A stretch of 64,000 nt of DNA from IMGVR_UViG_3300035703_000005:184836-248835, one strand, 5' to 3'. Counted from the first letter of the stretch, positions 14,001 to 37,944 are shown. Program-made: numbers and translations. The notes: generated by a model from the letters alone, not told the origin.

Positions 14001-17000
14001 GCTACTGCTGATGCTGGCAACAATGGTGCATAACCAAATCCGGTTGTAATTGCAACTTTAGAAATTTTACCAGCACTAGGAGTTCCAGATAAAAATCTTA
14101 CCACATTTTCGGAATTACCATCTATATCATAATCAACTTTTGGTTCTTGGAAAACATTATTGATAATAACAAAAGGATTATTGTTGATCAATGAAGAATT
14201 GTTTACATTATTAAAAATAGTTGTGGTTGTCTGACCACCAGATTTTAAAGTAAATTCTGTTGCGGCAATTCCAGTGAAAGATAAAGAAATATCGTCAAAA
14301 ATGATATTTTTATCTACTGGTTTTGAGGGATCAAATCTTCTAGTAAATACTCTACCAGAAAAAATAGAACCAGTTTCAAGACCAACTGGGCCAATTTTTC
14401 CATATGGAGCTGTTGTAAAGTAAATAACGTCACCATCAATATAATAATCTCCATTAAATATCGTTGCAGAAGCTCCTACAGTATGAATTCCAGAAACGCT
14501 ATTAAAATAACCCCTCTCCACATTTACAAAATTTGTCGAACCTATACCTATATTTTTAACAAGTAAGTATTCGGAATTAATATTGATTACATCATTGACA
14601 GCTAATGATGAAATTCCAGAAGAAACCTCGATAACTGAAGTTGTAGCAGTGGAAATTGGAGAATTTAAGGTAATTGCCAAAGATTTTCTTCTTAATTGAG
14701 TTTGTATTATTCCATCAATGGTTATAATTGTAGAAGGAAGTGGATCTTTATATTTTAAAGAATGTATGCCAGATCCTAGTCCAACAATATCAAAAAATAT
14801 ACTAGTAGATAATCCAGAAACCCTAAAGTTATTATCATCAATTTTATTGACAAATAAAGTTCGTGGTAATTTATCTGTACCTAGTACTGAAGGCGTAAAC
14901 GAAATACTATCATCTGGAGAATTTCCGCCAATATATGTTCCAGAAATAGATACTACGGATGTAGAAGCATATCCAGATCCTCCATTTACGACTTGAATTA
15001 AAGAAACAAGTCCATCATTGTCTCGATAAACATTAAAAATAGCACCTAATCCATTAGCATCGGTAGATGGTAAATTTAAGTAACTATTATTAGCTTCAGT
15101 CTGTATTCCAGTTGGTGCAGTTGCAGTAATAGTAAAACTTAAATCATTTGCTGGCGTAGACCCCTTAAAATAAGTACCCGCTATTGAAACCACATCCCCG
15201 ACTTTAAATCCAGATCCACCAGAAACTAATGAAAGGGATGTTGATAGAGGTTGACCTGTTCCAACGTCATATGTAATAAGTGCATTAAATTTAGCATTAC
15301 TTCCACTAGTAGTACCAAATCCAATAACATTTAAAAATAGTTGGTTACTTATTCCAGCTGGAACAACTACTGTAGAAATTCCTGTTATAGGACTAGTAAC
15401 TGCTTGTGCATATCCATTTTCAAAGATTGCTGTACCATCATAGTTTCCTACTTGCATTATTACGTCCAAATCACCAACAGCATAAGATGTTGTAGCAATT
15501 CCTATAGGCGATCCAATTCCATAATCATAAATCAATTCTTGTCCAGATTGGAAATTATGATTTATTGATGTAAAAGCGTTATTGGAGATATTGACTATCG
15601 CACTATCGGATGAATCAAATTCATATTTAAATAATGGAGTTCCTTTATTTTTCAGTTTAAATGTAGTTAATCCTACTACTGATCCGCTCCTAGAAATACT
15701 TGGATATACAACATTGGGAGCAGCAGTAGTACCAATTCCAATAATGGATGTTACTATCCCAATATAATTACCAATTGCAGACCAAACATCAGAACAACAA
15801 TTTTCATTATAAGTAGGACTACAAGAAGTATCCGCCAATATCCTAGTGTCAAATTGTTGAGGTTCCGTAAATACAGGTATTTGATATGAAGTGGATATAG
15901 CTACATTATTAATAACGTATTTCGATAAGTCAATAATATACTTAAATCCAGCTATAGTTTCTTCAGACTCTCCAGCTACATATGAAGTACCCAATCCACT
16001 CCAGTAAGCCAATCCGGCCTCAACAGACTTGTTATTTGATTTGTATTTAATGTCATGTGAGATTGCATCAACAATAAATCCAACATCTCTTTTGCAAATC
16101 TCACGATCCCAATCTATATTTGTTGTTATACCAGGATAAGACGAAGTAATAAATCCAACCACTTCCTCCTGAATAAACGATCTATTCAATTCCAAAAGAT
16201 CGGATGCATCAGCATATCTTCCATCCAATTCTTGAATAGAAGTTCCATCAAATTGGTCACTAATATCATCTATTGTTATGACTTTATTTGTTTTGTTGAT
16301 AATGAAATTTCTTAAAGATATCCCACCACTCAAAAATACTCTTTCAACTGAACCATCATCTAAAAAATCTTCTTCATATACTATAGTAAAGTTATCTTTT
16401 TCATATAGTGACTTGTGAGAATCTATATTTACCAAGAATGAAGATTGTTTATCGAGAACAGATGGTTTTAAATTGGTTGTTCTACCGATTCCGTGTGTTG
16501 CTTTGGTATAAATTTCCAAATCAGAAAATTCTTTAAATCCGGATGGGTGTATAATAGATCTTACAGACTCTCTCCAAATATCATATGGAATTTCACTCTT
16601 AATTGAATATGAAAACTTCTGGTAATAAAAATTATCGGAAATTCTTTGATTAAAATCGTTTAAAATTCCAACAGAGTTATCAATAACTCCCACCTTATCT
16701 CTAAATGGACCTAAAGTAGATCTTAGATTGAAACTATCATGATACTCTACTGTGCCTGTTATTTTTGATACTTCGCCGGTAATTTTATCTCCCGTTCTCA
16801 ATTCACCAAAAGAATTATTGGTTCTTAATTGATTTAAATCATTATCCCATCCATCTTCCATGACAATGGAAGAAAACTTAGTTGAAGTTACTCTTTCTTT
16901 AGAAAAATATTTAACATCATCAGCTAAAATCATATCAAAAACTGGCATGTCTTTTTTGTTTACGACATATCCCAAAGTAACTCCATCATCATACGTACCA

Positions 17001-20000
17001 AAAAGACCGGTAGATATTCCAGTCATATCATAAGTAACAGTATTATTCTGACTACTTATTCCAACTACTTCAAAAAATCTATATTCATATGATGAAGAAT
17101 TGAAATTAGACTTCGATTTTGTATTTGGAGTAAGTCTACAACCTTCGATAAAAATTTGATCACCAATTTCAAATGGGAAGATAAAATCAGTTTTACCATA
17201 TCCTGTAGAAATTAATGGATTAGAATTTGAAGAGTTAGCGAGTTCTAATGTTACCAAATCTCCAGAAACACTAATAAAATCAATATCATACCCATTAGAA
17301 TTGTAAATCGGTATAATATCGAGAGGTTCTGATAAATTAGTTACATTTTGGACAACATCAACTTTTACTATTGAACCACCACTGAGTTGAGGCTGTAACT
17401 TAATTTCTGTATTTTCTTTTACAAATAAAGTTGGTGGAGTATTATAATTTTTACCTCCAGTGATAATACCAATGTAATCAATTCTTCTTATATCTTTAAT
17501 TCCTATAACACTTGGTACACTTAATACAGGAGATAGAGTTGGATCTGTTGGATAATCAAATCCATCTTTAATTCTTTCTAAAGACTCTACTTTTCCAATG
17601 TTGGGAGAATTTAATTTTATTACTGCATCCTTACCTCTTTCGGATATAATGTTACTGACATATGGTAATTTGTCATACTTTCTGCCAGAAAAATTAATCT
17701 TAAGACTTGATATTGGACCATAAGCAGTTTTAGAACTAGTCAGATATTCAATTGTAGAGGATGCATAAGAATTTTTTTCTAATTCGGTTGGTTTATTTTT
17801 TAAATTAAAATTAAATACTCTATCAGAAGATTTATTAATAATAAATTTGCTATTTAATATATGAGATTTCAAAACAACTTTATTATTACCAATTACATCC
17901 TTATCGGAAGTAATTTGATTTTTTCTTTCATCTATTGGACTCTTTGGTAATAAGTTATAGTAAAGTAATTTTGGAAATCCAGAGATAGAAGTATCCAAAT
18001 CTACATATGATCCAGGGAATCCTGCAGTACCATTTCTCGTAATTGCAAATCCTATTTCAGTATTTCCTATAATTTCTAATTTCTTTTGGAAATCAACGTC
18101 AGCATAAAATTCCAGATACATATCAAGAATACTTGCATCTGAAAGATCAAATCTAATTACATTCCCATCAACAAAATGGAATGGAGGGTTTATTAAATAA
18201 AATCCGTGAGATGATCCGCCAACAGAATTGATATTTACTACTACATTATTTTTTATGTCAACTCTATTTTTGCATAGTTTTACATTATCAAAATCCGTTT
18301 TTAAGATATAATATACTTCATTATTTTGCAATCCATCGGCAGGATTACTGGAAACATATACTACTTTATCACCAGTTTTTAAACTGGTATCAGTTAAGTC
18401 AATTTTATTCTCATTTATGTTAATATCTGAATTAGTAAATTCAATTCTTTCTCCAGTAATTTTCCTGATTTCTGGATTATATAATATTTTTACAGAGTCG
18501 GTTTGATTATTAAATATTTTTAGTTCTATTTCATCACCGGTTAACAAATTGTGGTCCGCAGTAGTCGTTACTATTCCAGTAAATCTTTCCAAAGTTGACG
18601 TAACTTGGAAATTTTTTGTGGTTAATGAATGTGAAGCGCCTACAGTATTTAAAATATCATCAAAATTTACAAACTCTACACAATTTAAAGTTGTTCCTAT
18701 CCCACCAACACTACTAGTAAATCCTATAGTGGATATTCCAATATAATCAACACCAAAATTTACTGCATATACTGTTTGACCTTCATCAAAAGATATAGAA
18801 GTGGCGGATCCTACATTATTATATTTGAGTGGTGTACCATTAAATCCGGAAAAATAAGTTAATGGTTGACCAGTGTAAAACTTATGGTTTGGTATATAGA
18901 TTGATTTTTGTGGAATAAATCTAGATTCTACGCTACTTGTACCAATACCAACCAAAGACCTTGTAACTCCAGCCGTACCTGTTCCAACTGACTCACTAGG
19001 ATTGAAAAATACAATTTCATTTAAAGTAATAGAGTCGGAATTTGATCGTTCAAGATCAAATGTAAACTCAGTTGGTAGTAATTTTACTACATCAATTCCG
19101 GCTGTATGAACGCCTGTATTTTGAATTCTATTAACATAAAATCCAGATCTTTCTGGGGAAACTCCCGTAATATGAAGAATTTCGGTGCCTATGCCAATGA
19201 AATCATTTGATTTAAACCCGGAAATATCTTTTACGGTTATAAAAGTAGAAAGTCCGGTCGTAACTTGATCTTGAATATCATTTAGAAGTTCAATAGTTTT
19301 GTCTAAAACACTTATTACATGACTACCTTCAATAGTCGATGACGTTATAGTCGAAACTCCAGTAAGAATAATAGTTTCATTATTAACTAATTGATGAGGT
19401 TCATCAGTTTTTCCAACTACTTTTCTTGATTTAATATCAAAGTTAACTTTTATAATTTTATTATCGACAATAGAAAACTGTAAAACATCAGACCCCTTAA
19501 CTTTTGAAACTACAATATTTGCTCCACTTCCAGAAGTATTTTTATTTTCAATTACTAATCTATCGTCAACTTGATAATCTCTACCAGCTGAGAAAATAGA
19601 AGTTGAAGTGATTCCAGAAAAATTAACTGTATCTATTCTAAATTCTTGTTTATAATCTTCAGAAACTCTATCAATCAAATCGTAATATGAATTATTAAAA
19701 TTTAAATAATATGGACCGACATTTCTAGTTATGTTAAAAGTGCCAATATCAAGATCCTGATTAAAAACTGGTAAAAAGTTTTCTTTAATTGGTTGGTCTT
19801 TAAAATATTCACCAATTACATACGGATATGATGGAACAGAATTTCCAGTTGGATCAATACTTATGGATGTAAAATACGCATAAATTCCATCTGGATATTG
19901 TGGCGTTAAACACCATCTTCCATTATATTCATCAAGATCTCCAGAGCCCGTATAAACATAATCGTTAATGAAATATCCAGGCTCAAATCCCTGTGGACGA

Positions 20001-23000
20001 ACAAGTGGATCAGTGTTTGCCCTTAATTCATAACTGGTTCTTATTTGTCTAATAGAACCTCCAGATAAAGGATCATATCCATATGGACCATAAATTGGAT
20101 TTCCATCATATGCAAATCCAAGAATAGGTGAATGAGAAAGAGTATTTAAGTTCTCAGAATTGGTATCTGTAAAGTTATCATTTAATTGGAATCTGAGTTT
20201 TTTGGGAATATAGAAATTTATAAATTCTAATCCAAAATCTGGATTTTTACTTGGGTATAGAATTCCATCGTCTTCATCAGAAATTGATGGAATTGACTTG
20301 ACAACCTGATTTATTTTCCATTCAAATACATTGCCTAAAAATTTTGCATCCGACCCTCTATTAACAACTGACATGGTTGTGTTTGAGGATGCATATCCAA
20401 CACCACCAGAAATAATATTTACTGATACAACTCTACCATCTTCTATAATTGGATCAATCTGAGCAAACTGACCATTTCCATTAATTATAATGTCAGAGTC
20501 TTTTCTATATCCTCTACCTCTGTTGATAATTTTAACATCTCTAACGGTTCCGTTAATAATGATTGGTTTTAATACACATTCAGATATTATACTGGAAAAT
20601 CCTACATTAGGTCTTCTATGGTAATTTACAATATCCGTGCATCCATAAGAAACTCCACCATCTTCCAAATAAACATCAGTTATTGAACCAAGAACTATTG
20701 GTTCTAATAATGGTTGAACAATATCGGTTGATCCAATAGCAGATAATGCTTCTACTGAAACAGTTATTGCTGGATAACCAATAGTGTGAGTTCCAAATCC
20801 CAAACTAGAAAATTCTACAAATATATTATCAATGTAATTATTCCTAGTAGATGTTGTACCAATTCCCGCTTCAGATAACTTAAATTTATTTTTGTCGATT
20901 ACTTTTACATAATACTGAATTTGAGTAGATAATCCTGCAATTGGAGTACCAGTAGTTGAGTATTCAACTAATTCACCATCAGAAAAACGATGATTTGTAG
21001 CACAAATATATGAATCAAAGGTATTAATTCCAATGTTATCTTTTAAACTTAAAATAGAAGGTACTTTTACTTTTCTGTTGGAATATCCTTTACCAGGATC
21101 TTTAACAAATACTTGAGTAATAGTATTTTTACTTTTAATAGTTTCTATAACATGGAATCCAGAACTAATTCCTACTATATCAACCTCATTTACTTTATTT
21201 ACTGCATCTTGAAAAGTGTTGAAAATTTTGATTGAATTTGAACTGGTAATTCCAACAAAATACCTAGAACCATCAACTAAACCACCAATATTACTATTTT
21301 GATTAGATCTATAAATTACTTCTTCAGCGTCATCAAAATTGTGATCATTTAAAAAAGTAATAACATTAGTCAAAGTGTTTACTGCAGACTCTGGTCTAAA
21401 TCCTACGGATATTCTGGATTTAATTAAATTGGATTCTAAAATACAACCAGATCCATTTCCACCAGATATTGTAATTTTTGGTTTTGTTTGATAACCAATT
21501 CCTGGAGTTATTACTTTAACTGATTTTACTTCACCGACTAAATTGACATGTGCTTTCGCTCTAGATCCAGTATCGTCTTTAATTTCTAAAGGAGCAACAT
21601 TAATTACATCATAATTTTTACCAGAATTTGTAACATCAATAGAAACTAATTTTCCATAGTAAATGTTTTCATCAAAAAGAGTAGGAGATAATAATTCAAC
21701 TCCATTAGCCAAAAGTCCTACGGCTCTATTATTAGTTGTCCTATCATTTTTGTCATCAAAAACATTAAAAGCTCTGTTTAATCTAAACTTTTTTAATAAT
21801 TTTTGATTCTTTATTGTTTTATTCTCATATCCAGACTTGAAAAATCTATCGGATGAGATTCCAGAATTAAAACTTATATATTTTTTGGAAAAAAGATCAG
21901 TATTACTATAAGATAATTTAATATTATTATTATTGAGTTTAGTTACAAAATAATACCCTGTAGAAATTCCAGAAAAATTGCTGGAAATTGGATCATAATA
22001 AATTGAATCACCAGTGACTAAATTATGATTTTGTGAAAATAGTGTATCTGTAATGCCTGCTCCAGAACTAGAAGCATTTTTTTCCGTATTCTCTATGAAA
22101 AGAGTATAATTAGGTAGTCCTGTAGATGTTACATAGAAATTAGAATCTTCAGAATCTACATATGTATTCTGAACTCCTGATGGAATTTTTGAAAGTCCAT
22201 CAAAAAATCCACGATTATGATTTGCTTTATAAATTATCTTTTTTACAACTTTAGAATTTAAAAGATTAAATGTTGGATTTAAAGCCTGAACTACTAATCT
22301 GTTAGAATATTTTCTAATTGTATCTCCAGGATCAAATTCTACAGAAATTATAGAAACATTGGAAGAATTGTTAATTCCATCATCTAGTTTAATAATTTCA
22401 TCTTTATAAAAAGAGACTTTATCGTAGAGAACAACTCTAAATTTATTTGCGTCTAACTGAGAAACATTTTTTATTATGTGATTTGTAGGAATATTATAAA
22501 TCCAAGAATTAAATTGGAAAGAATCACTTAAATCTTTTCCGAATCCAGAAAGAGTAACTTTATCTCCTACTTTTAAATTAGAAGTTTTGGAAAAATCTAT
22601 AGAATCTATAACATTTACAATTCGGAAGTCTACTCTCGACGTATTTCCAAATCCAATATAACTAAAAGCAAATTTTTCTTCAACAATATCTAATCCATAG
22701 TCAAGATCTCTATCAATTCCAGTAACTCCTAAGAATTGATTATTTGTTTTATCCGAATAAAACAATTCTATTGTATTATAATTTTTGGGAGTTACTAAAA
22801 TTTTACCAGATTTGGAAAATCCAATGGTAGAGTCAACAAGAATAGTATCAGAATTTTTTGGAACACTCTCTAAAATTTTAGTTTTACCAGCAACTTGAAA
22901 TGCTCCTGATAATGAGGTCGAATCCAAAGAAATTTCGTATAAATTTTTATTTCTTAGTGGTCTAAATTCTACGTTAAAAATAGAAGCACTTACAGTTCCA

Positions 23001-23800
23001 ACACCACTAACATTTTGGAATAAAAAATTACCTCTAATTTGAGTAGGATCACCACCTGAAATTTTTTCTACTAATATATTCTTTGTAGTAAAATATGAAT
23101 TTGAAGATGGGATTATAGTAAAATCTTGAGGTTTAATAATTTCAATATCTTTATTATATAAAATTTTGAAAAGAATTTTATACGAAGTATCCGTTCCTTT
23201 AGACGTATAAAAATCTTTTGCTCGAATTAAAATATTTTTTACAGAAAGTTCGTCTACAAAATTTCTTGATTCAAATCCAGGTAAAAATTCAGATTTATAC
23301 TTTTCAAAAAATTCTTTGATAAAAAGATTACTTAAATTTTCTACAACAGAACCAGATGGATGTTCTGAAGCTTCAGTAGAAGAGAATGTTAAAAATTTGG
23401 AATCATCGACAGATTTTATTTTATCTATTCCACTAAAACCTCTAACACAATCTACAAATGAATTGGAAGTTTTTTCTTTGTAAGTAATAATCTCATTATT
23501 GATTTTCAACAACCCATAGGAGTCTGGCCAACCTTCAGTAGAATCGACATGTATTACATCATCAAAACTTAAAATCTCAGAAGTAGTTTGTGCAGAGGAA
23601 TTTAAGTTTGAAAAAGTAAAATTATCAATATTTTTATAACTAGGTAAATTTATTGATAAATCAATAGCTCCAGAAAAATGTTCTAAAGAATTATAGTATT
23701 CGGAAAGAAAAGCTTTAAAAAGTGGAGATTCCTCTGTCAAAAACTCAGGAATTTGAGACTGGAGGATATTATCGATTTTTACCTTTTTAGTGTTGGACAT
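11012..23800 (-). CDS. gp7: giant baseplate wedge initiator (gp7-like) with YHYH-type domain and beta-propeller repeats
   Basis: 4262 aa between gp6 and gp8; N-term ILQSQIPEFL..FLSEYYNSLE, FYTSKGT; many GxGY repeats; HSPILGFAYDGNPIYGPYG and DLDEYNGR..TPQYPDGIYAYF. Confidence 0.75.
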   Translation of the reverse strand: MSNTKKVKIDNILQSQIPEFLTEESPLFKAFLSEYYNSLEHFSGAIDLSINLPSYKNIDNFTFSNLNSSAQTTSEILSFDDVIHVDSTEGWPDSYGLLKINNEIITYKEKTSNSFVDCVRGFSGIDKIKSVDDSKFLTFSSTEASEHPSGSVVENLSNLFIKEFFEKYKSEFLPGFESRNFVDELSVKNILIRAKDFYTSKGTDTSYKILFKILYNKDIEIIKPQDFTIIPSSNSYFTTKNILVEKISGGDPTQIRGNFLFQNVSGVGTVSASIFNVEFRPLRNKNLYEISLDSTSLSGAFQVAGKTKILESVPKNSDTILVDSTIGFSKSGKILVTPKNYNTIELFYSDKTNNQFLGVTGIDRDLDYGLDIVEEKFAFSYIGFGNTSRVDFRIVNVIDSIDFSKTSNLKVGDKVTLSGFGKDLSDSFQFNSWIYNIPTNHIIKNVSQLDANKFRVVLYDKVSFYKDEIIKLDDGINNSSNVSIISVEFDPGDTIRKYSNRLVVQALNPTFNLLNSKVVKKIIYKANHNRGFFDGLSKIPSGVQNTYVDSEDSNFYVTSTGLPNYTLFIENTEKNASSSGAGITDTLFSQNHNLVTGDSIYYDPISSNFSGISTGYYFVTKLNNNNIKLSYSNTDLFSKKYISFNSGISSDRFFKSGYENKTIKNQKLLKKFRLNRAFNVFDDKNDRTTNNRAVGLLANGVELLSPTLFDENIYYGKLVSIDVTNSGKNYDVINVAPLEIKDDTGSRAKAHVNLVGEVKSVKVITPGIGYQTKPKITISGGNGSGCILESNLIKSRISVGFRPESAVNTLTNVITFLNDHNFDDAEEVIYRSNQNSNIGGLVDGSRYFVGITSSNSIKIFNTFQDAVNKVNEVDIVGISSGFHVIETIKSKNTITQVFVKDPGKGYSNRKVKVPSILSLKDNIGINTFDSYICATNHRFSDGELVEYSTTGTPIAGLSTQIQYYVKVIDKNKFKLSEAGIGTTSTRNNYIDNIFVEFSSLGFGTHTIGYPAITVSVEALSAIGSTDIVQPLLEPIVLGSITDVYLEDGGVSYGCTDIVNYHRRPNVGFSSIISECVLKPIIINGTVRDVKIINRGRGYRKDSDIIINGNGQFAQIDPIIEDGRVVSVNIISGGVGYASSNTTMSVVNRGSDAKFLGNVFEWKINQVVKSIPSISDEDDGILYPSKNPDFGLEFINFYIPKKLRFQLNDNFTDTNSENLNTLSHSPILGFAYDGNPIYGPYGYDPLSGGSIRQIRTSYELRANTDPLVRPQGFEPGYFINDYVYTGSGDLDEYNGRWCLTPQYPDGIYAYFTSISIDPTGNSVPSYPYVIGEYFKDQPIKENFLPVFNQDLDIGTFNITRNVGPYYLNFNNSYYDLIDRVSEDYKQEFRIDTVNFSGITSTSIFSAGRDYQVDDRLVIENKNTSGSGANIVVSKVKGSDVLQFSIVDNKIIKVNFDIKSRKVVGKTDEPHQLVNNETIILTGVSTITSSTIEGSHVISVLDKTIELLNDIQDQVTTGLSTFITVKDISGFKSNDFIGIGTEILHITGVSPERSGFYVNRIQNTGVHTAGIDVVKLLPTEFTFDLERSNSDSITLNEIVFFNPSESVGTGTAGVTRSLVGIGTSSVESRFIPQKSIYIPNHKFYTGQPLTYFSGFNGTPLKYNNVGSATSISFDEGQTVYAVNFGVDYIGISTIGFTSSVGGIGTTLNCVEFVNFDDILNTVGASHSLTTKNFQVTSTLERFTGIVTTTADHNLLTGDEIELKIFNNQTDSVKILYNPEIRKITGERIEFTNSDININENKIDLTDTSLKTGDKVVYVSSNPADGLQNNEVYYILKTDFDNVKLCKNRVDIKNNVVVNINSVGGSSHGFYLINPPFHFVDGNVIRFDLSDASILDMYLEFYADVDFQKKLEIIGNTEIGFAITRNGTAGFPGSYVDLDTSISGFPKLLYYNLLPKSPIDERKNQITSDKDVIGNNKVVLKSHILNSKFIINKSSDRVFNFNLKNKPTELEKNSYASSTIEYLTSSKTAYGPISSLKINFSGRKYDKLPYVSNIISERGKDAVIKLNSPNIGKVESLERIKDGFDYPTDPTLSPVLSVPSVIGIKDIRRIDYIGIITGGKNYNTPPTLFVKENTEIKLQPQLSGGSIVKVDVVQNVTNLSEPLDIIPIYNSNGYDIDFISVSGDLVTLELANSSNSNPLISTGYGKTDFIFPFEIGDQIFIEGCRLTPNTKSKSNFNSSSYEYRFFEVVGISSQNNTVTYDMTGISTGLFGTYDDGVTLGYVVNKKDMPVFDMILADDVKYFSKERVTSTKFSSIVMEDGWDNDLNQLRTNNSFGELRTGDKITGEVSKITGTVEYHDSFNLRSTLGPFRDKVGVIDNSVGILNDFNQRISDNFYYQKFSYSIKSEIPYDIWRESVRSIIHPSGFKEFSDLEIYTKATHGIGRTTNLKPSVLDKQSSFLVNIDSHKSLYEKDNFTIVYEEDFLDDGSVERVFLSGGISLRNFIINKTNKVITIDDISDQFDGTSIQELDGRYADASDLLELNRSFIQEEVVGFITSSYPGITTNIDWDREICKRDVGFIVDAISHDIKYKSNNKSVEAGLAYWSGLGTSYVAGESEETIAGFKYIIDLSKYVINNVAISTSYQIPVFTEPQQFDTRILADTSCSPTYNENCCSDVWSAIGNYIGIVTSIIGIGTTAAPNVVYPSISRSGSVVGLTTFKLKNKGTPLFKYEFDSSDSAIVNISNNAFTSINHNFQSGQELIYDYGIGSPIGIATTSYAVGDLDVIMQVGNYDGTAIFENGYAQAVTSPITGISTVVVPAGISNQLFLNVIGFGTTSGSNAKFNALITYDVGTGQPLSTSLSLVSGGSGFKVGDVVSIAGTYFKGSTPANDLSFTITATAPTGIQTEANNSYLNLPSTDANGLGAIFNVYRDNDGLVSLIQVVNGGSGYASTSVVSISGTYIGGNSPDDSISFTPSVLGTDKLPRTLFVNKIDDNNFRVSGLSTSIFFDIVGLGSGIHSLKYKDPLPSTIITIDGIIQTQLRRKSLAITLNSPISTATTSVIEVSSGISSLAVNDVININSEYLLVKNIGIGSTNFVNVERGYFNSVSGIHTVGASATIFNGDYYIDGDVIYFTTAPYGKIGPVGLETGSIFSGRVFTRRFDPSKPVDKNIIFDDISLSFTGIAATEFTLKSGGQTTTTIFNNVNNSSLINNNPFVIINNVFQEPKVDYDIDGNSENVVRFLSGTPSAGKISKVAITTGFGYAPLLPASAVATVSAAGTISAISLTGAGSGYRQNINVSIASTIGSGASITASVGAGGTVTGFTIVNAGSGYTTTSLPTVVIGIPTSYSNLGVAYTGGSSGVGQGAKISVTVGQGSSIISFKIDNPGIGYKVGDVLSVIGITTNPGLSTSFEEFTLTVKEIQNDKFNGFYPGQFIKFDDISSNFNGFRKKFTLSVTTNNVREILSLRTIPGSDLNITNNIFVYINDVLQTPESSYTYSGSRIIFKEAPKENSTCSILYYRGSSIDVEQIEPPKTIKEGDVIIIRENKNDLLDIDQFDRTVKKIISSDQFDTFTYNSVGITTDSTKDRPLTWIKQTQDKIISGSLYSKSRPSIRSRVKPNAHVIKKIVPTDESIYIDNAYPLFSDVDSVAEDLRDLVIGENRITEDAICTSVVSSSSSISSIVISDGGVGYAYTGNPVVTISRSSITRKDPIKDWKPSTGISSLYDLNSISYTGKYVVAVGDNDTFAYSLNGSSWQASSVGFGITISYNSIIGVGTNRYFVGGSYGTVATAVSVGNTIGPWSAINLLREIVTPTVGVTARVSAGYTGPISDITYSSYLDTVVVVGLSSIFSGVGIGTTTLISRFSGTLQTLNSLAYGPSNIIAVGNDSVILSSVNGVIWEDLLSPTTANLNKVIHVDGEFVAVGDFGTVIKSTNSFTFNLVTTNISEDIIDISYNDFYVILTSLGNLYYSFDLSNWVLRETNQVNNLRSGLFINEIGLEGRYIFVGSSGTSIYADPIYNRATAISNVTAGVVTSVTIINGGFGYSQSNAPSVLIEPDSPKTEFVRSFKVMGDYGTIIGINTFVAGTPGIGTTSPKVEFVLKSEFYDNSTLGIGYSSLNSFGITYSQLSKGDYFVITNSNVTVGHALTGITTSLGGMSNYPASRVGTSTEFLDGVYIVENVTNAASGIVTVTCNFAPIEGPTGNYVEVYKRGENNTGINTNNFYGRYSWSKIFDYENRVLGSPKQFDVYTNNGLVGLLTGPMISRTRDL

Positions 23801-28463: not shown

Positions 28464-28730
28464 CTACACTTTTGCAATTGCAATATATTCGAGATTATTT
28501 TGAATATATCCCTCATTTTTTGCTGATACAACTAAATCAGATTTATTTGTAAATCCAATGCGTTTTCCTTCTTCCAATTTATCACGCACATAAGAATACA
28601 TAATCATATCAATTTGTTTAGTTGTAATATTATCAATTATTTTTTGAACCGCTTCTTGAATATCGGAGTTTCTACTAAAAACTTCTAAGGCTATTACTTG
28701 TGCTTCGGTTAAAGTAACAATGCATTCCAT
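28464..28730 (-). CDS. hypothetical protein
   Basis: 88-aa ORF with ATAAATA late-type motif upstream. Confidence 0.55.
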   Translation of the reverse strand: MECIVTLTEAQVIALEVFSRNSDIQEAVQKIIDNITTKQIDMIMYSYVRDKLEEGKRIGFTNKSDLVVSAKNEGYIQNNLEYIAIAKV

Positions 28731-28860
28731 GAATAATACTTTTATATTTCAAAATATTTATTTTTAATTTACTTTGATGGGGGTAAAAAATTACCAAAAA
28801 AATTTTTGAATCGAAAGAGGCTTTATGAGCGCTTTTTGGGGTCGTTATAGATTAGGGTAG

Positions 28861-28901
28861 TTAGCGTTTTTTCAAACGGGGGCCACCGCGCCCCGCGCTA
28901 A
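28861..28901 (-). terminator. GC-rich hairpin at the early/late boundary, probable terminator
   Basis: CGGGG/CCCCG stem nested in TTAGCG/CGCTAA; followed by TTTG on minus strand. Confidence 0.45.
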
Positions 28902-29027
28902 CACAAACGCCCCGCCACATAACTGCTCAAACTGCTCATAAGCTCACGAACACCGCTGCTCGTTCTCCGATGTATTCGTGTCCCCTCCAAGTGCTCATAA
29001 GCCTCAGAGGGGACGCTACATAAACTC

Positions 29028-29252
29028 TCACACAGCCTTAGAGCACTTGTTGTTCTTGGTGACTGCAGCTGCATCACTGATAGCACCATGCAGGAATGCC
29101 CCTTTAGGAGCAGCATTCGCCCAAGCCCTCTGACCCGTGAGTGCTTTCACACCGCGACGGGAGGGCTTAAGCACAGTGTACTTAATCTGCCCCTGAACAT
29201 CAGCGACCAGCAGTTCGAGTTTGGTAGCAGTTGCGATGTTGATGGTGCTCAT
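29028..29252 (-). CDS. small early protein
   Basis: MSTINIATATKLELLVADVQGQIKYTVLKPSRRG...; start reassigned to the ATG at 29252. Confidence 0.6.
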   Translation of the reverse strand: MSTINIATATKLELLVADVQGQIKYTVLKPSRRGVKALTGQRAWANAAPKGAFLHGAISDAAAVTKNNKCSKAV

Positions 29253-29312
29253 GATGTTGTTAGCGAAGTGTGTGTGGTGAGTGTAGACGAATGTGAAGAG
29301 CTTATGTAACAA

Positions 29313-29573
29313 TCAATCACGAAGCTCTTGGATCATTTCATCCAGCTCAATGTGGTTCAGCTCAGGGTCATTCCAGAGTACACCATCAGGGGTGCAGCTC
29401 TTACCGAAATCATCAATCATAAGCTCTTGGAACTCGGCATAATCATCACACTGCAGAGCAATGCTGTAGAAACCATAATCATTGCCAATCCACAGAGCAA
29501 CATTCCAGGTCTCATAATTGCTCCAACCGTTGTAGGTCTCTTGTGCAAGCTTGGGCTGGAAGGTGGTGGTCAT
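29313..29573 (-). CDS. conserved cyanophage early protein (YNGWSNYETWNVALWI family)
   Basis: Recognisable motif; GAGGA SD in the repeat leader supports the start at 29573. Confidence 0.7.
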   Translation of the reverse strand: MTTTFQPKLAQETYNGWSNYETWNVALWIGNDYGFYSIALQCDDYAEFQELMIDDFGKSCTPDGVLWNDPELNHIELDEMIQELRD

Positions 29574-29580
29574 GTGTGTT

Positions 29581-29654
29581 CCTCTCAACATGGCTAAGAT
29601 ACCCCATCTGGCTACCCCATGGCATCATCTGTGGCCAGTTATTAAGCTGTCCAC
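29581..29654 (-). promoter_or_regulatory. early promoter cassette (TATCTT -10, AGCCATGTTGAGAG leader, two-box operator)
   Basis: + strand CCTCTCAACATGGCTAAGATAC ... GTGGCCAG-N8-CTGTCCAC. Confidence 0.75.
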
Positions 29655-29771
29655 TATTCACTCAGTTGTCAAGGTTCTATGGTAGGCTCATGATCCTTTG
29701 TGGCTTGAGCTTTACTTAAGCTTTCTTAAGCGGCTTAAGCACTCAGCCCCTTTATGCACTCCCACAGAGTT

Positions 29772-29801
29772 ATTATAAGCCATTCAGAGGGCTTATGTCA
29801 A
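29772..29801 (-). promoter_or_regulatory. consensus sigma70 promoter (leftward)
   Basis: TTGACA (29801-29796), 18 nt, TATAAT (29777-29772). Confidence 0.75.
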
Positions 29802-29837
29802 GCATGAGGATTAGAGCCCTTAGAGTGCTCATAAGGC

Positions 29838-29879
29838 TGTGGAAAACTTATAGACTTTTTCCACAAGTGTTGTGGAAAA
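29838..29879. promoter_or_regulatory. DnaA-box triplet 1
   Basis: TTTTCCACA at 29838-29846 (-), 29857-29865 (+), 29871-29879 (-). Confidence 0.8.
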
Positions 29880-29947
29880 CTTATAAGAACTGTGAGACCT
29901 TATGTGTAGCAAACTGTGTGGGTTCTGAGATTTATGTCCGGGTGCCA

Positions 29948-29976
29948 TTGACATTTTAGCGGTCGTGTGATAGCCT
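29948..29976 (+). promoter_or_regulatory. sigma70 promoter (rightward, antisense to all genes)
   Basis: TTGACA (29948-29953), 17 nt, TAGCCT (29971-29976) with an extended -10 TG. Confidence 0.7.
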
Positions 29977-29983
29977 GCCCGCT

Positions 29984-30111
29984 AAGATCACAAGGTCTCA
30001 GAGGCTTTTCAAGGGTGCTAACACAAGGTCTCAGAGGGCTTTAAGACTCTAGAAGCACCCTAAACTCACATGGCTTTGCGAAAGAAAGCTTTAACAAAGC
30101 CATGTTTTTTT
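29984..30111 (+). ncRNA. putative ~128-nt small RNA
   Basis: Downstream of the + promoter; AGGGTGCT/AGCACCCT stem; 16-nt direct repeat; ends in an 11-bp hairpin ACATGGCTTTG/CAAAGCCATGT plus T7; no convincing ORF. Confidence 0.6.
30068..30111 (+). terminator. intrinsic terminator
   Basis: 11-bp stem 30068-30078/30095-30105 followed by a run of T to 30111. Confidence 0.75.
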
Positions 30112-30131
30112 AGCCATTTATTTTAAGCCCT

Positions 30132-30165
30132 TTTTCCACAGCTTTTTCCACAGCGTTGTGGAAAA
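30132..30165. promoter_or_regulatory. DnaA-box triplet 2
   Basis: TTTTCCACA at 30132-30140 (+), 30144-30152 (+), 30157-30165 (-). Confidence 0.8.
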
Positions 30166-30250
30166 GCTATCATAACTCATTGTTAGCAACTCTCGGAGCA
30201 CTAGTAGTATGTAACTCCACTCCTCTCTAGGTGTTGTTTCCGTTGAGAGC

Positions 30251-30403
30251 TTAGGGGTCATAACTCTCTAACTCTACAGCCCCTTGAGCATAATCATCAT
30301 AGAACAGCTCATCCTCTGTGTGATTAGCATAGTGATCCATGATCTCTTGCTCAAAGTCAAAGAAGCTTTCTTCCCCGATAGGGTGAGCGTTAGCGATGTT
30401 CAT
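30251..30403 (-). CDS. small acidic early protein
   Basis: Hand-translated 50 aa MNIANAHPIGEESFFDFEQEIMDHY...; ATGA overlap with the upstream gene. Confidence 0.55.
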   Translation of the reverse strand: MNIANAHPIGEESFFDFEQEIMDHYANHTEDELFYDDYAQGAVELESYDP

Positions 30404-30585
30404 TTATTCCTCCTGGTGTTGTATTCTCCGAGATTCTCTACATAAACCTCGTTGACACTTTCGTTACCTTTGAGTTCCAGAAGCTCACGCCAATTCCATT
30501 CCTTTGGACTGACACAATTTGTAGCATCAACTGTGAAGTCAAGAGTAACTCTGTAGCGCGTAACTTTGTCGTTGATTGTTTGCAT
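30400..30585 (-). CDS. small early protein
   Basis: 61 aa, RYRVTLDFTVD...PKEWNWRELL. Confidence 0.6.
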   Translation of the reverse strand: MQTINDKVTRYRVTLDFTVDATNCVSPKEWNWRELLELKGNESVNEVYVENLGEYNTRRNK

Positions 30586-30905
30586 TGTGCGATGTCCTTT
30601 GAGTGTAACAAACTACGTAGCTATTTTATACTGTTTGAGGGTTTAAGTCAACAAAATTGTCATACTTTGACAACACTTCATTGATGACTTGATCTGTGAA
30701 ATAATCCACGATTTCATCATACATGAAGCTAATAGTTTCAGGTGAATAATTGTTCACCCAATTCGCTGAGATAAATGTTACTTCGGCTGATGGCATGATT
30801 CTTGAAAGTATTGTGCATAGCTTGGATTGAAACAACTGTCCCGCCATGTGGCGAAGATCAGTAGAGTCGTGGGAACGATTGCGATAGCAAATAGATGGCG
30901 TTTTT

Positions 30906-31106
30906 TCATGAGTTGTTAATCAGATCTTGTTCAATCTGTTGGAGCATGTTTTCTGTCCAAGCTTGAGGATCTGCGACACCATTGTTTGCGTAGAGTTGAC
31001 TATACCGTAGACCATAAAGATCTGGGTTTAGGTGTTGCAACTCTTCAAGAGTTTGAGCAATCCGAACCTGTAGAATGTAGTCGTCAATCATGATGCAAAA
31101 TGTCAA
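30906..31106 (-). CDS. small early protein
   Basis: 66-aa minus-strand ORF tiling the cassette. Confidence 0.55.
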   Translation of the reverse strand: MTFCIMIDDYILQVRIAQTLEELQHLNPDLYGLRYSQLYANNGVADPQAWTENMLQQIEQDLINNS

Positions 31107-31402
31107 TCATTTTTTGATGGTAAGCATCAGCGAGTTGCACAACATTATGAGATTGAGTAGGATCTTCAATCTCGTATTGTGTCATCTCAAGAGCAAAAAT
31201 GACGGTGGAGAGTAACTCTTGCAACTGTTCAAGCTTTTGAGTTTCAGTCATCATTTGGATTCACCTCTTTGAGAACTTGAGTGAACAATTCAATCGCAGC
31301 TTCGTTGCAGTTGTCTTTCTTCATTCGGTAAATGTAGAACTCCAATGCTTCAGTGATAGCTTCTTGTTTGAGTTCTTCCCAGGTTGGCTTTGTCATGATA
31401 AT

Positions 31403-31606
31403 TCAAGCCAAGATTGCGGACTTCATTTCAACATTGCGGATTTCCATCCGAGCATAATCATACCCCTCAACTTCCGTCAGTTGTTGATAGTATGCTTCAG
31501 CCGTAGAACGACAATCAAACAAGCAGAGAGAATCAAAGCTTTCGCCTTCATAATTCCAACCACCGATCACAGCATAAACTTGCACGAGGTTTGCTCCGTT
31601 GTTCAT
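31403..31606 (-). CDS. small early protein (leaderless)
   Basis: MNNGANLVQVYAVIGGWNYEGESFDSL...; ATG 7 nt after the TATCTT -10. Confidence 0.65.
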   Translation of the reverse strand: MNNGANLVQVYAVIGGWNYEGESFDSLCLFDCRSTAEAYYQQLTEVEGYDYARMEIRNVEMKSAILA

Positions 31607-31671
31607 GTGGCTAAGATACCAGGCCCAGAGTCCCCTCGGCGTGATCAGTGGACAGCCAGTGAACTGGCACA
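31607..31671 (-). promoter_or_regulatory. class A early promoter cassette
   Basis: -10 TATCTT 31618-31613; CGCCGA at -35; GTGGACAG-N8-CTGGCACA 31648-31671. Confidence 0.8.
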
Positions 31672-37669: not shown

Positions 37670-37944
37670 AGAAGATGATAAATTAGTGGTTCAAGTGCAT
37701 CAACAGGTTGACCTGTTCTCTTCAACATGTAGTAACCTTGTAACATTTTAAGGTCACTACCTTTCTTGGGTATTTTACCCTTTGGTGGTGGAAGTGGATC
37801 ACCAAACTTTCTGGGTTTCCCAGGCTTTCTCTTCCACCACTTTTTTTCTTCCTCTAATTCACGAGGAAGTGTAACTGACCAACTCCGAACTTTATGCGTG
37901 AAGTTCATAATTTCAGTTGATGATTGTGTCAGTTTCAGGATCAA
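37666..37944 (-). CDS. small basic early protein
   Basis: WWKRKPGKPRKFG..GYYMLK; start uncertain. Confidence 0.5.
   Translation of the reverse strand: MILKLTQSSTEIMNFTHKVRSWSVTLPRELEEEKKWWKRKPGKPRKFGDPLPPPKGKIPKKGSDLKMLQGYYMLKRTGQPVDALEPLIYHLL

What the first reader, a model, noticed from the sequence alone, without database searches (positions are those of the whole stretch)
29700..29801. Divergent consensus promoter and helically phased CTTAAG palindromes beside the DnaA boxes
Seen: a perfect TTGACA-18-TATAAT fires leftward, back-to-back with the + promoter, so triplet 1 lies between divergent promoters. Just downstream are CTT(G/A)AG palindromes at 29704, 29715, 29725 and 29734 (about 10-bp period, same helical face). 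Inference: iteron-like or bending-protein sites, or a hairpin-rich leader RNA. Divergent transcription would negatively supercoil the DnaA-box region, as expected for an origin.
Basis: partly seen in the sequence, partly recalled or inferred. Interest (0 to 1): 0.6.

Follow-up and report, generated by a model that had tools for sequence, protein, structure and literature searches.

The report
Conserved early promoter with repeat-bearing leader
The leftward consensus promoter is very probably a real early promoter of a freshwater T4-like cyanophage, one of a repeated family, whereas the phased CTTAAG palindromes downstream are mostly specific to this lineage, lie in its transcribed leader, and show no sign of being iterons or a conserved hairpin.

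Summary
A 12/12 TTGACA-18-TATAAT sits on the - strand (29801->29772), and CTTGAG/CTTAAG hexamers sit at 29704, 29715, 29725 and 29734.

The window is the end of a 249-kb T4-like cyanomyovirus from freshwater or subsurface metagenomes, with nearly all genes on the - strand. The promoter is therefore co-directional with the genes. Its hexamers are near-invariant in all 15 related contigs and in the cultured phage S-SCSM2R (two contigs read TTGCCA). It belongs to a clade-wide cassette family (TTGACA-N17/18-TAYAAT-AACTCTGTGGRG) that resembles PeSL elements of T4-type phages.

It would transcribe a 198-nt leader before a DUF7249 gene. The last ~100 nt of that leader is a second cassette repeated at least 10 times in the window.

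The hexamers lie at about +26 to +62. Two are conserved (GGCTTAAGC and GGCTTGAGC, 30 bp apart), one is half conserved, and one is lineage-specific. Distant homologues have none or one. I found no covariation, no Rfam match, no low duplex stability and no iteron-like unit.

The DnaA-box triplets co-occur with the promoter in close relatives but are absent from S-SCSM2R. The origin reading is therefore possible but unsupported. No transcription start could be mapped.

The parts
29772..29801 (-). P1: sigma70-type promoter with -35 TTGACA (29801->29796), an 18-nt spacer and -10 TATAAT (29777->29772). A 7-bp inverted repeat ATAAGCC/GGCTTAT (29796->29790 and 29781->29775) spans the spacer.
   Evidence: 12/12. 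Hexamers near-invariant in relatives (two contigs read TTGCCA) and perfect in S-SCSM2R.
29759..29771 (-). Conserved box AACTCTGTGGGAG directly after the -10, covering the predicted transcription start (about 29764-29767). It is the hallmark of the clade-wide promoter cassette.
   Evidence: The same box follows TAYAAT at genome 3441(+), 151032(+), 110996(-) and 214636(-). It occurs in 48 IMG/VR stretches, each with a proper -35.
29732..29740 (.). Hexamer 1 within GGCTTAAGC (8-bp palindrome GCTTAAGC); conserved.
   Evidence: GTGCTTAAGC on the - strand in 12 of 15 homologues.
29725..29730 (.). Hexamer 2, CTTAAG; lineage-specific.
   Evidence: Present only in the window, L191, L102 and L282. Elsewhere it reads TTTGAG, TCTGAG, TCTAGAG or GCTAAA.
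29715..29720 (.). Hexamer 3, CTTAAG; half conserved.
   Evidence: CTTAAG in 6 sequences, CTTATG in 7, CTCCAG in 1, and not alignable in L287.
29702..29710 (.). Hexamer 4 within GGCTTGAGC (AAAGCTCAAGCC on the - strand); near-invariant and not a palindrome.
   Evidence: CTCAAG is invariant in 15 of 15 homologues. The 9-mer GGCTTRAGC occurs only 3 times in the 249-kb genome: 29164, 29702 and 29732.
29677..29691 (-). Conserved block ATGAGCCTACCATAG, a possible 4-codon mini-ORF (MSLP*).
   Evidence: The variants are AGC>AGT, CTA>TTA/ATA/CCA and TAG>TAA, all of which keep a 4-codon frame. The frame is not kept in L281.
29574..29680 (-). Type II repeated cassette. It holds a hairpin GTGGACAG...CTGGCCAC (29654->29631), a promoter-like ATGCCA-N18-TATCTT (TATCTT at 29601->29596), and the conserved AGCCATGTTGAGAGGAACA with the Shine-Dalgarno site (29586->29580).
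   Evidence: At least 10 copies on the - strand of the window. 62 distinct copies in the loci held, placed before unrelated genes.
29313..29573 (-). First gene downstream of P1, encoding an 86-aa DUF7249 / phrog_871 protein of unknown function.
29838..29879 (.). DnaA-box triplet 1 (TTTTCCACA at 29838-46 on -, 29857-65 on +, 29871-79 on -), lying 37-78 bp upstream of the P1 -35.
   Evidence: Six of the genome's 14 boxes lie in the two triplets.
29948..29976 (+). Divergent promoter-like site TTGACA-17-TAGCCT inside a 92-bp near-invariant block (29918-30009).
   Evidence: The -35 is TTGACA in 7 and TTGCCA in 3 of the 10 sequences aligned there. The -10 is invariant.

Best explanation
P1 is an ordinary but strongly conserved early promoter of a T4-like cyanomyovirus. 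It is read by the unmodified host sigma70-type (SigA) RNA polymerase and fires in the same direction as the genes.

It is one copy of a clade-specific promoter cassette (TTGACA-N17/18-TAYAAT followed by AACTCTGTGGRG). That cassette often carries a stem-loop in or beside the promoter, as PeSL elements of other T4-type phages do.

From about 29765, P1 would transcribe a 198-nt leader, the DUF7249 gene 29313-29573, and the small genes that follow. The last ~100 nt of that leader is a second, independently repeated cassette (hairpin, TATCTT promoter-like box, Shine-Dalgarno site). The gene therefore probably has two tandem promoters.

The CTTAAG-type hexamers lie at about +26 to +62 of the P1 transcript. 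What selection keeps there is primary sequence, not a phased array:
- two 9-mers, GGCTTAAGC and GGCTTGAGC, 30-31 bp apart;
- the block AAAGCTCAAGCCACA.

The other two hexamers look like local, lineage-specific copies of the same half-site (GCTTA/TAAGC).

My committed reading is that the two conserved 9-mers are sequence-specific recognition sites, on promoter-proximal DNA or on the 5' leader, for a factor that modulates early expression from P1.

Shown: the promoter consensus, its conservation, its family, its orientation, and which hexamers are conserved. Inferred: that P1 is active early, where transcription starts, and any role of the 9-mers.
For: - Promoter consensus is 12/12. The genome has 8 perfect sites against about 0.6 expected, and 7 of the 8 are on the coding strand.
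- The -35 and -10 hexamers are conserved in all 15 related IMG/VR sequences (TTGCCA in L204 and L281) and in S-SCSM2R. The distance from -10 to ATG is fixed at 196-199 nt in the 11 measured.
- The same post -10 box occurs at 4 genome sites and in 48 IMG/VR stretches. Several have a terminator hairpin carrying the -35 in its loop. This matches the PeSL description in PMC2839356.
- The literature states that cyanomyovirus early genes carry sigma70-like motifs (PMC2984593).
- The first 97 nt of the leader is 76-91% identical to relatives whose downstream coding sequence is only 55-63% identical.
- Hexamer conservation pattern. GGCTTRAGC occurs only 3 times in the genome.
- No covariation in any tested helix.
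- A metatranscriptome run holds a contig over 29562-29795 but nothing over 29838-30004. This is weak evidence.
Against: - No transcription start was mapped. The RNA evidence is contigs only, and DNA contigs break at the same place (29790-29803), so the contig end says nothing about a start.
- High conservation could partly reflect recent exchange of the module by recombination rather than selection. Mosaicism is visible, and joints between cassettes appear.
- No protein that would bind the 9-mers is identified.
- The 9-mers are not found at other promoters of the genome, so a general regulator is unlikely.
- Tight co-occurrence with DnaA boxes in close relatives hints at a function beyond plain gene expression.
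Confidence: 0.6

Rival explanations
1. Origin-coupled promoter. The 680-bp gap is a phage replication origin that recruits host DnaA to the two TTTTCCACA triplets. It opens at the AT-rich element beside triplet 2. P1, with the divergent + promoter, would activate it by negative supercoiling or by supplying an R-loop primer, as at T4 oriF/oriG or lambda ori. The hexamers would bind an accessory or architectural protein.
For: - Six of the genome's 14 perfect boxes lie in two triplets.
- Triple arrays of this box are common in bacterial chromosomes of many phyla, cyanobacteria included.
- The least stable 30-mer of 29300-30500 (30105-30134) adjoins triplet 2 and is conserved.
- P1, the boxes and the cassette co-occur in 14 of 14 close loci and in none of 29 more distant ones.
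- The whole architecture is kept in the divergent homologue L281.
Against: - S-SCSM2R keeps P1, the leader, the conserved block and the AT-rich part but has no TTTTCCACA box. L002/L191 has lost all but one box.
- DNA contigs from the source sample and a second study join 29613 to 31638. Related genomes therefore lack the whole module (laid at likeness 85, so treat with caution).
- GC skew is monotonic with no switch.
- The DNA downstream of P1 has average stability and is not an unwinding element.
- No initiator gene is recognised nearby.
Confidence: 0.2
2. Structured leader or small RNA. The first ~97 nt made from P1 folds, with the palindromic hexamers forming one or two hairpins and the 5' CUCUGUGG pairing with CCAUAGA. 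It would act as a stabilising 5' structure, a cis-regulatory element or a separate small RNA.
For: - The hexamer segment alone folds better than shuffles (z -2.7; -3.6 to -4.1 in the sequences with several perfect CTTAAG copies).
- RNAalifold closes the domain with UCUGUGG/CCAUAGA, paired in 97% of cells.
- The replacements of hexamer 2 (TTTGAG, TCTGAG) could still pair with hexamer 1 through G-U wobble (my reading).
- The leader is more conserved than the gene behind it.
Against: - There is no covariation: observed values equal shuffled values for all four helices, and half of the sequences break pair 36-59 without compensation.
- Per-sequence minimum-energy structures differ between homologues.
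- Whole-domain z-scores are -0.8 and -0.45.
- No Rfam family matches.
- Pairing of the 5' box with downstream sequence is not a feature of the promoter family (mean z -0.9).
- No terminator follows the domain.
- L287 lacks hexamers 1-3.
Confidence: 0.15
3. The hexamer array has no function of its own. It is a by-product of local duplication or slippage of a GCTTAAG unit in this lineage, inside a leader conserved for other reasons (promoter-proximal sequence, a mini-ORF, or recent spread of the module).
For: - TRF sees a short period-11 tandem array.
- Hexamer 2 exists only in the window's near relatives, and hexamer 3 is degenerate in half.
- CTTAAG is not over-represented genome-wide: 96 observed against about 85 expected (my arithmetic).
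- Homologues without the array keep the rest of the module.
Against: - Hexamers 1 and 4 and their 30-31 bp spacing are kept across relatives whose flanking gene has diverged to 55-63%.
- The triple is not expected by chance.
Confidence: 0.25

Closest known systems
PeSL (promoter-early stem-loop) cassettes of T4-type phages RB49/phi1, nt-1/KVP40 and PST/T4 (Arbiol et al. 2010, PMC2839356; Comeau et al. 2014, PMC4122927)
   Same: - A near-perfect sigma70 promoter is repeated as a conserved cassette in the hyperplastic region of small unknown genes.
- A stem-loop lies between or overlaps the -35 and -10. Here that is the 7-bp repeat ATAAGCC/GGCTTAT; in sister copies it is a terminator hairpin with the -35 in its loop.
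- Related genomes differ by insertion or deletion of modules bounded by repeated cassettes.
   Different: - P1 has no AT-rich tract upstream of the -35.
- It is 198 nt, not a few nt, from the Shine-Dalgarno site and start codon.
- Its family is marked by a conserved box after the -10, which is not part of the PeSL description.
- Only 4 copies occur in this genome.
- PeSLs have not been reported at density in cyanophages; PMC4503421 found few in S-PM2.
Sigma70-like early promoter motifs of cyanomyoviruses S-PM2 and Syn9 (reviewed in PMC2984593)
   Same: Host-type -35/-10 upstream of early genes in phages that lack alt, modA/B, motA and asiA. Expression is presumed to use unmodified host polymerase.
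   Different: Activity of this copy is untested. The extended +1 box was found among cultured phages only in S-SCSM2R.
T4 oriF (uvsY) / oriG origins: promoter plus downstream unwinding element with an R-loop primer (my own knowledge of the T4 literature)
   Same: A strong promoter with a conserved ~100-bp transcribed non-coding stretch, in a T4-like genome.
   Different: The T4 elements use a MotA-dependent middle promoter and a helically unstable downstream element. Here the downstream DNA has average stability, and there are DnaA boxes, which T4 origins lack.
Iterons of plasmid and phage origins, such as P1 oriR and lambda ori (my own knowledge)
   Same: Short repeats at roughly helical spacing next to DnaA boxes.
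   Different: Iterons are 17-22 bp, occur in 3-7 conserved copies, and are bound by a Rep or O protein encoded nearby. Here the core is 6-9 bp, two copies are conserved, and no initiator gene is recognised.
E. coli oriC flanked by the mioC and gidA promoters (my own knowledge)
   Same: A DnaA-box cluster and an AT-rich element flanked by promoters whose transcription could alter local supercoiling.
   Different: There is no evidence here of initiation, no skew switch, and the boxes are dispensable in relatives.

Membership tests
Bacterial sigma70 (SigA)-type promoter | -35 TTGACA and -10 TATAAT separated by 17 +/- 1 bp | tested here: met
   12/12 with an 18-bp spacer. The spacer is 17 bp in L008/L012/L215, L102, L281 and S-SCSM2R.
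Bacterial sigma70 (SigA)-type promoter | Hexamers conserved in relatives while the flanks vary | tested here: met
   Hexamers are near-invariant (TTGCCA in L204 and L281), while the 15 bp upstream of the -35 is variable.
Bacterial sigma70 (SigA)-type promoter | A primary transcript 5' end about 7 nt downstream of the -10 | not testable with these tools
   Only contigs of one metatranscriptome were available. A contig covers 29562-29795, but DNA contigs break at the same place.
PeSL cassette (Arbiol 2010) | Sigma70-consensus promoter joined to a stem-loop, repeated as a conserved motif in the hyperplastic region | tested here: met
   There is a 7-bp inverted repeat in the spacer. Sister copies with hairpin-embedded -35 occur at genome 110996 and 3441 and in L247, L252, L253 and L285. 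The location is among small unknown genes.
PeSL cassette (Arbiol 2010) | AT-rich tract upstream of the -35, and Shine-Dalgarno plus start codon at the 3' end of the ~100-bp motif | tested here: not met
   The sequence upstream of the -35 is not AT-rich, and the start codon is 198 nt away. The type II cassette, not P1, carries the SD and ATG.
PeSL cassette (Arbiol 2010) | Recombination between copies (module gain or loss, mini-circles) | tested here: inconclusive
   The joints 29613->31638 and 32500->29567 in DNA contigs of two studies lie in type II cassettes, not in P1. They were laid at likeness 85.
Iterons of a replication origin | Three or more direct repeats of about 17-22 bp, conserved in sequence and number | tested here: not met
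   The common core is 6-9 bp. Two copies are conserved, one is half conserved and one is lineage-specific. L281 has none and S-SCSM2R has one.
Iterons of a replication origin | Initiator (Rep/O-type) gene nearby | tested here: inconclusive
   The neighbouring small genes have no annotated function in Pfam or PHROGs. No fold search was done.
T4 oriF/oriG-type origin | Helically unstable element directly downstream of the promoter | tested here: not met
   30-mers over 29700-29745 score -36 to -41.7 kcal/mol, against a regional mean of -38.8 +/- 2.1. The minimum lies at 30105-30134.
oriC-like DnaA-dependent origin (beside the finding) | Cluster of DnaA boxes with an adjacent AT-rich element | tested here: met
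   Two triplets of TTTTCCACA. The least stable 30-mer adjoins triplet 2.
oriC-like DnaA-dependent origin (beside the finding) | Strand-composition switch, and retention across relatives | tested here: not met
   Cumulative GC skew is monotonic. The boxes are absent in S-SCSM2R and nearly all lost in L002/L191.
Structured cis-regulatory RNA or small RNA | Match to a curated family, or base pairs kept by compensatory change | tested here: not met
   No Rfam hit. Covariation equals the shuffled controls for four helices on 15 sequences.

The most novel reading that the evidence does not exclude
The conserved 680-bp non-coding module is a DnaA-recruiting, transcription-activated replication origin of a T4-like cyanophage. 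The module comprises two DnaA-box triplets, an AT-rich element, a 92-bp invariant block, divergent promoters, and the leader with the two GGCTTRAGC sites. P1 would fire away from the boxes to open or prime the origin, and the 9-mers would bind a phage accessory factor. The module would be carried on a cassette-bounded unit that is gained and lost between related phages. This would be the first defined origin in cyanomyoviruses, and the first in the T4 superfamily to use host DnaA.
Probability: 0.15. Interest if true: 0.75.

Novelty: new member of a known kind. Interest (0 to 1): 0.35.

Why it matters
Sigma70-type early promoters are expected in T4-like cyanophages, so the promoter alone adds little.

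- **Promoter family.** It defines a clade-specific promoter family with a conserved box after the -10, and shows PeSL-like architecture in a cyanophage lineage.
- **Non-coding module.** It shows that the promoter heads a non-coding module more conserved than the gene behind it.
- **Link to DnaA boxes.** In freshwater relatives, but not in the marine cultured relative, this module is tied to perfect DnaA-box triplets.
- **Experimental route.** S-SCSM2R on Synechococcus WH7803 offers a cultured system for asking whether these phages sense or use host DnaA.

Tried and rejected
**Searches for relatives**
- A near-identity search of phage genomes with 28500-31500 found nothing. A distant search matched only the DUF7249 coding part.
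It was useful only for L102.
- A search of 401 cyanobacterial genomes with the 677-bp gap matched only the DnaA-box part, so the leader is not host-derived among those searched.
- 'Relatives' cannot be drawn for a virus record, and 'of' needs a G handle.

**RNA tests**
- Rfam gave no family at gathering scores over the whole window, and only chance-level snoRNA hits at E 2-6.
- Four candidate helices showed no covariation: 5' box with CCAUAGA, 5' box with CCACAGAG, hexamer 1 with hexamer 3, and GGCUGAG with CUCAAGCC.
- A hexamer 1 to hexamer 2 hairpin kept through G-U wobble looked attractive by eye, but per-sequence folds give inconsistent structures.
- A general 5'-terminal helix in the promoter family was rejected (mean z -0.9).

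**Other readings of the gap**
- A + strand small RNA from TTGACA-17-TAGCCT to the hairpin plus T7 at 30070-30112: the hairpin is strong only in the window (-17.2 kcal/mol) and weak or absent in relatives.
- GC skew as origin evidence is uninformative because nearly all genes share one strand.

**Reads**
- The runs are kept as contigs only, so no start, end or strand could be read.

- I did not use the large protein searches, structure prediction or complex prediction. No claim here rests on them.
- Read laying was given 5001 letters.
- No alternative genetic code was used.

Full report
**What the sequence is.** The window is the last 64 kb of a 248,835-bp virus record rated complete. Baseplate genes gp6, gp8-like and gp25 and gp6 identities of 65-70% to Synechococcus phages S-SCSM2R, Sf-FS3 and S-SSM7 make it a T4-like cyanomyovirus. 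Near-identical DNA occurs in subsurface, freshwater and lake metagenomes from 11 studies. Of the ORFs of 150 aa or more, 150 of 169 lie on the - strand. From about 26 kb to 50 kb of the window the G+C content rises from about 31% to 40-46%, and the genes there are small and unannotated. This is a hyperplastic region in the T4 sense.

**The observation.** A 12/12 TTGACA-18-TATAAT lies on the - strand at 29801->29772. The genome has eight perfect sites of this kind, where composition predicts fewer than one, and seven of them are on the coding strand. The triple CTTAAG is unique in the window and absent from 100 shuffles. All of this lies in a 677-bp gap (29574-30250) between two - strand genes. 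The gap also holds six of the genome's fourteen TTTTCCACA boxes, arranged as two triplets.

**Conservation.** The whole gap aligns at 74-85% identity with a dozen distinct IMG/VR contigs found through the downstream protein. In all of them the -35 and -10 of the leftward promoter (P1) are conserved, and the distance from the -10 to the ATG is 196-199 nt. More homologues came from motif scans, giving 15 distinct leader sequences.
- Hexamer 1 (GTGCTTAAGC on the - strand) is kept in 12 of 15.
- CTCAAG of hexamer 4 is kept in all 15.
- Hexamer 3 is CTTAAG in 6 and CTTATG in 7.
- Hexamer 2 exists only in the window, L191, L102 and L282.
- The divergent homologue L281 keeps the entire architecture of the gap but has no CTTAAG, and L287 lacks hexamers 1-3.
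- The cultured S-SCSM2R has a syntenic, unannotated 488-bp gap with a perfect TTGACA-17-TATAAT, the same box after the -10, one CTTAAG and no TTTTCCACA box.

The four-fold, ~10-bp phasing is therefore a property of one lineage. What is conserved is a pair of 9-mers, GGCTTAAGC and GGCTTGAGC, 30-31 bp apart. That 9-mer occurs only three times in the whole genome, all within 570 bp.

**P1 belongs to a promoter family.** The sequence after the -10, AACTCTGTGGGAG, recurs after TAYAAT at three other genome sites. It also occurs in 48 IMG/VR stretches, each with a TTGAC(A) at the right distance. Among cultured phages it was found only in S-SCSM2R. Several members carry a G+C-rich hairpin plus a T-run with the -35 in the loop. 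P1 itself has a 7-bp inverted repeat between its -35 and -10. This is the architecture described for PeSL cassettes of RB49/phi1 and other T4-type phages. P1 fails two PeSL features, though: it has no AT-rich upstream tract and no adjacent Shine-Dalgarno site and start codon. Reviews state that cyanomyovirus early genes carry sigma70-like motifs and that these phages lack the T4 proteins that remodel host polymerase. P1 is co-directional with the genes, so the simplest reading is an early promoter for the DUF7249 gene and what follows it.

**The leader is composite.** Its last ~100 nt (29574-29680) is a second cassette: a hairpin, a promoter-like CCGCCA-N17/18-TATCTT, the conserved AGCCATGTTGAGAGGAACA, and then the start codon. 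At least ten copies lie on the - strand between 29603 and about 40021. Sixty-two distinct copies precede unrelated genes in the loci held. In DNA contigs of the source sample and of another study, 29613 is joined to 31638 and 32500 to 29567. These are joints between such cassettes, and the first removes the whole P1/DnaA-box module (laid at likeness 85, so these may be related phages). Only the first ~97 nt of the leader, which holds the hexamers, is specific to this locus. That part is 76-91% identical to relatives whose downstream coding sequence is only 55-63% identical. It is therefore either under constraint or exchanged as a module.

- *Iterons or a bending array.* The unit is too short, too few copies are conserved, and no initiator gene is recognisable nearby.
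- *Unwinding element.* Nearest-neighbour stability of the array is average. The least stable 30-mer of the region is 30105-30134, beside DnaA triplet 2.
- *Hairpin-rich leader.* Folding of the 95-nt and 196-nt leaders is not better than shuffles (z -0.8 and -0.45). Only the palindromic segment itself stands out (z -2.7). RNAalifold proposes a closing helix and a hexamer 1:3 hairpin with a positive covariation term. On 15 sequences, four candidate helices show pairing and covariation equal to shuffled controls, with uncompensated breaks. Per-sequence structures disagree. Rfam has no match. Pairing is therefore not what the data show to be conserved, although the low divergence leaves little statistical power.

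**The origin idea.** In favour:
- The boxes are perfect and clustered. Triple arrays like them are common in bacterial chromosomes.
- An AT-rich conserved element adjoins triplet 2.
- P1, the boxes and the cassette co-occur in 14 of 14 close loci and in none of 29 distant ones.

Against:
- S-SCSM2R keeps P1 and the leader without boxes, and L002/L191 has lost nearly all of them.
- Related genomes appear to lack the module.
- GC skew shows no switch.

The divergent + strand site TTGACA-17-TAGCCT is conserved, but it lies inside a 92-bp near-invariant block, so its conservation is not specific to the promoter hexamers. The hairpin plus T7 that would end its transcript is strong only in the window. 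The one metatranscriptome that holds related sequence has contigs over the leader (29562-29795) and none over 29838-30004. DNA contigs break at the same point, so no start can be inferred.

**Verdict.** The promoter is very probably real, and it is a new member of a known kind: a sigma70-type early promoter cassette of a T4-like phage. The palindromes are mostly lineage-specific. Two conserved 9-mers in the leader remain unexplained, and I rate a sequence-specific regulatory site as their most likely role. A link to a DnaA-dependent origin is the most novel reading still open, at about 0.15.

Noticed in passing
window 29574-29680, and further copies whose GGTATCTTAGCC core starts (- strand) at 31620, 32569, 33626, 34494, 35211, 36118, 38162, 39442 and about 40021: A ~100-bp cassette is repeated at least 10 times on the - strand before unrelated small genes. 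It comprises a hairpin GTGNCAG-N8-CTGNCCAC, then CCGCCA-N17/18-TATCTT, then AGCCATGTTGAGAGGAACA and the start codon. In two copies the ATG follows TATCTT almost directly. 62 distinct copies occur in related contigs. It looks like a second, non-consensus PeSL-like promoter/5'-UTR cassette, or possibly an RNA element.
   Followed up: partly
window 29613/31638 and 32500/29567: DNA contigs from the source sample and from a second study join these points, which lie inside type II cassettes. The first joint deletes the 2-kb module holding P1, the DnaA boxes and three small genes. This is consistent with cassette-mediated module shuffling (laid at likeness 85).
   Followed up: partly
window 29838-29879 and 30132-30165: Two triplets of perfect TTTTCCACA boxes sit inside longer repeats (TGTGGAAAACTTATA twice, CTTTTTCCACAG three times). 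They are conserved in close relatives and expanded to 2+4 in L281. They are absent from the cultured relative S-SCSM2R and almost lost in L002/L191.
   Followed up: partly
window 30105-30134: An AT-rich (77%) conserved element directly beside DnaA triplet 2 is the least stable 30-mer in 29300-30500. The strong hairpin before its T7 run (30070-30112) is specific to the window.
   Followed up: partly
window 29918-30009: A 92-bp block is nearly invariant across relatives and recognisable in S-SCSM2R. It contains TTGACA-17-TAGCCT on the + strand and a repeat of CACAAGGTCTCAGAGGC (also at 30022). No coding potential or covariation is evident, and its function is unknown.
   Followed up: partly
genome 3441 (+) and 151032 (+), outside the window: Two copies of the P1-type promoter point against the gene direction, into the 3' ends of small - strand genes. 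One overlaps a bidirectional terminator hairpin. S-SCSM2R shows the same arrangement at 37677-37733. These may be antisense transcripts.
   Followed up: partly
window 29677-29691 (- strand): A possible 4-codon mini-ORF, ATG AGC CTA CCA TAG (MSLP*), lies in the leader. Variants in relatives are synonymous, conservative or stop-to-stop, but the frame is not kept in L281.
   Followed up: partly
window 29858-29887 and 30145-30173 (+ strand): In both triplets a DnaA box supplies a -35-like TTTCCA, followed at 17-18 bp by TATAAG or TATCAT and then AACT. This echoes the P1-type -10/+1 box. The first looks conserved; the second does not.
   Followed up: no
window 1870-9375 and 11012-23800 (- strand): Two giant ORFs of 2501 and 4262 aa flank the gp8-like gene, next to gp6 and gp25, in the 30% G+C part of the window.
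   Followed up: no
window about 26000: G+C content steps sharply from about 31% (structural genes) to 40-46% (small-gene region, 28-50 kb).
   Followed up: no
window 30170-30250 (- strand): A conserved ~80-nt segment lies right after the stop of the upstream gene, with inverted repeats (CTCTC...GAGAG, GGAG...CTCC). S-SCSM2R has a 10-bp hairpin at the same place. It may be a terminator or processing site without a T-run.
   Followed up: no
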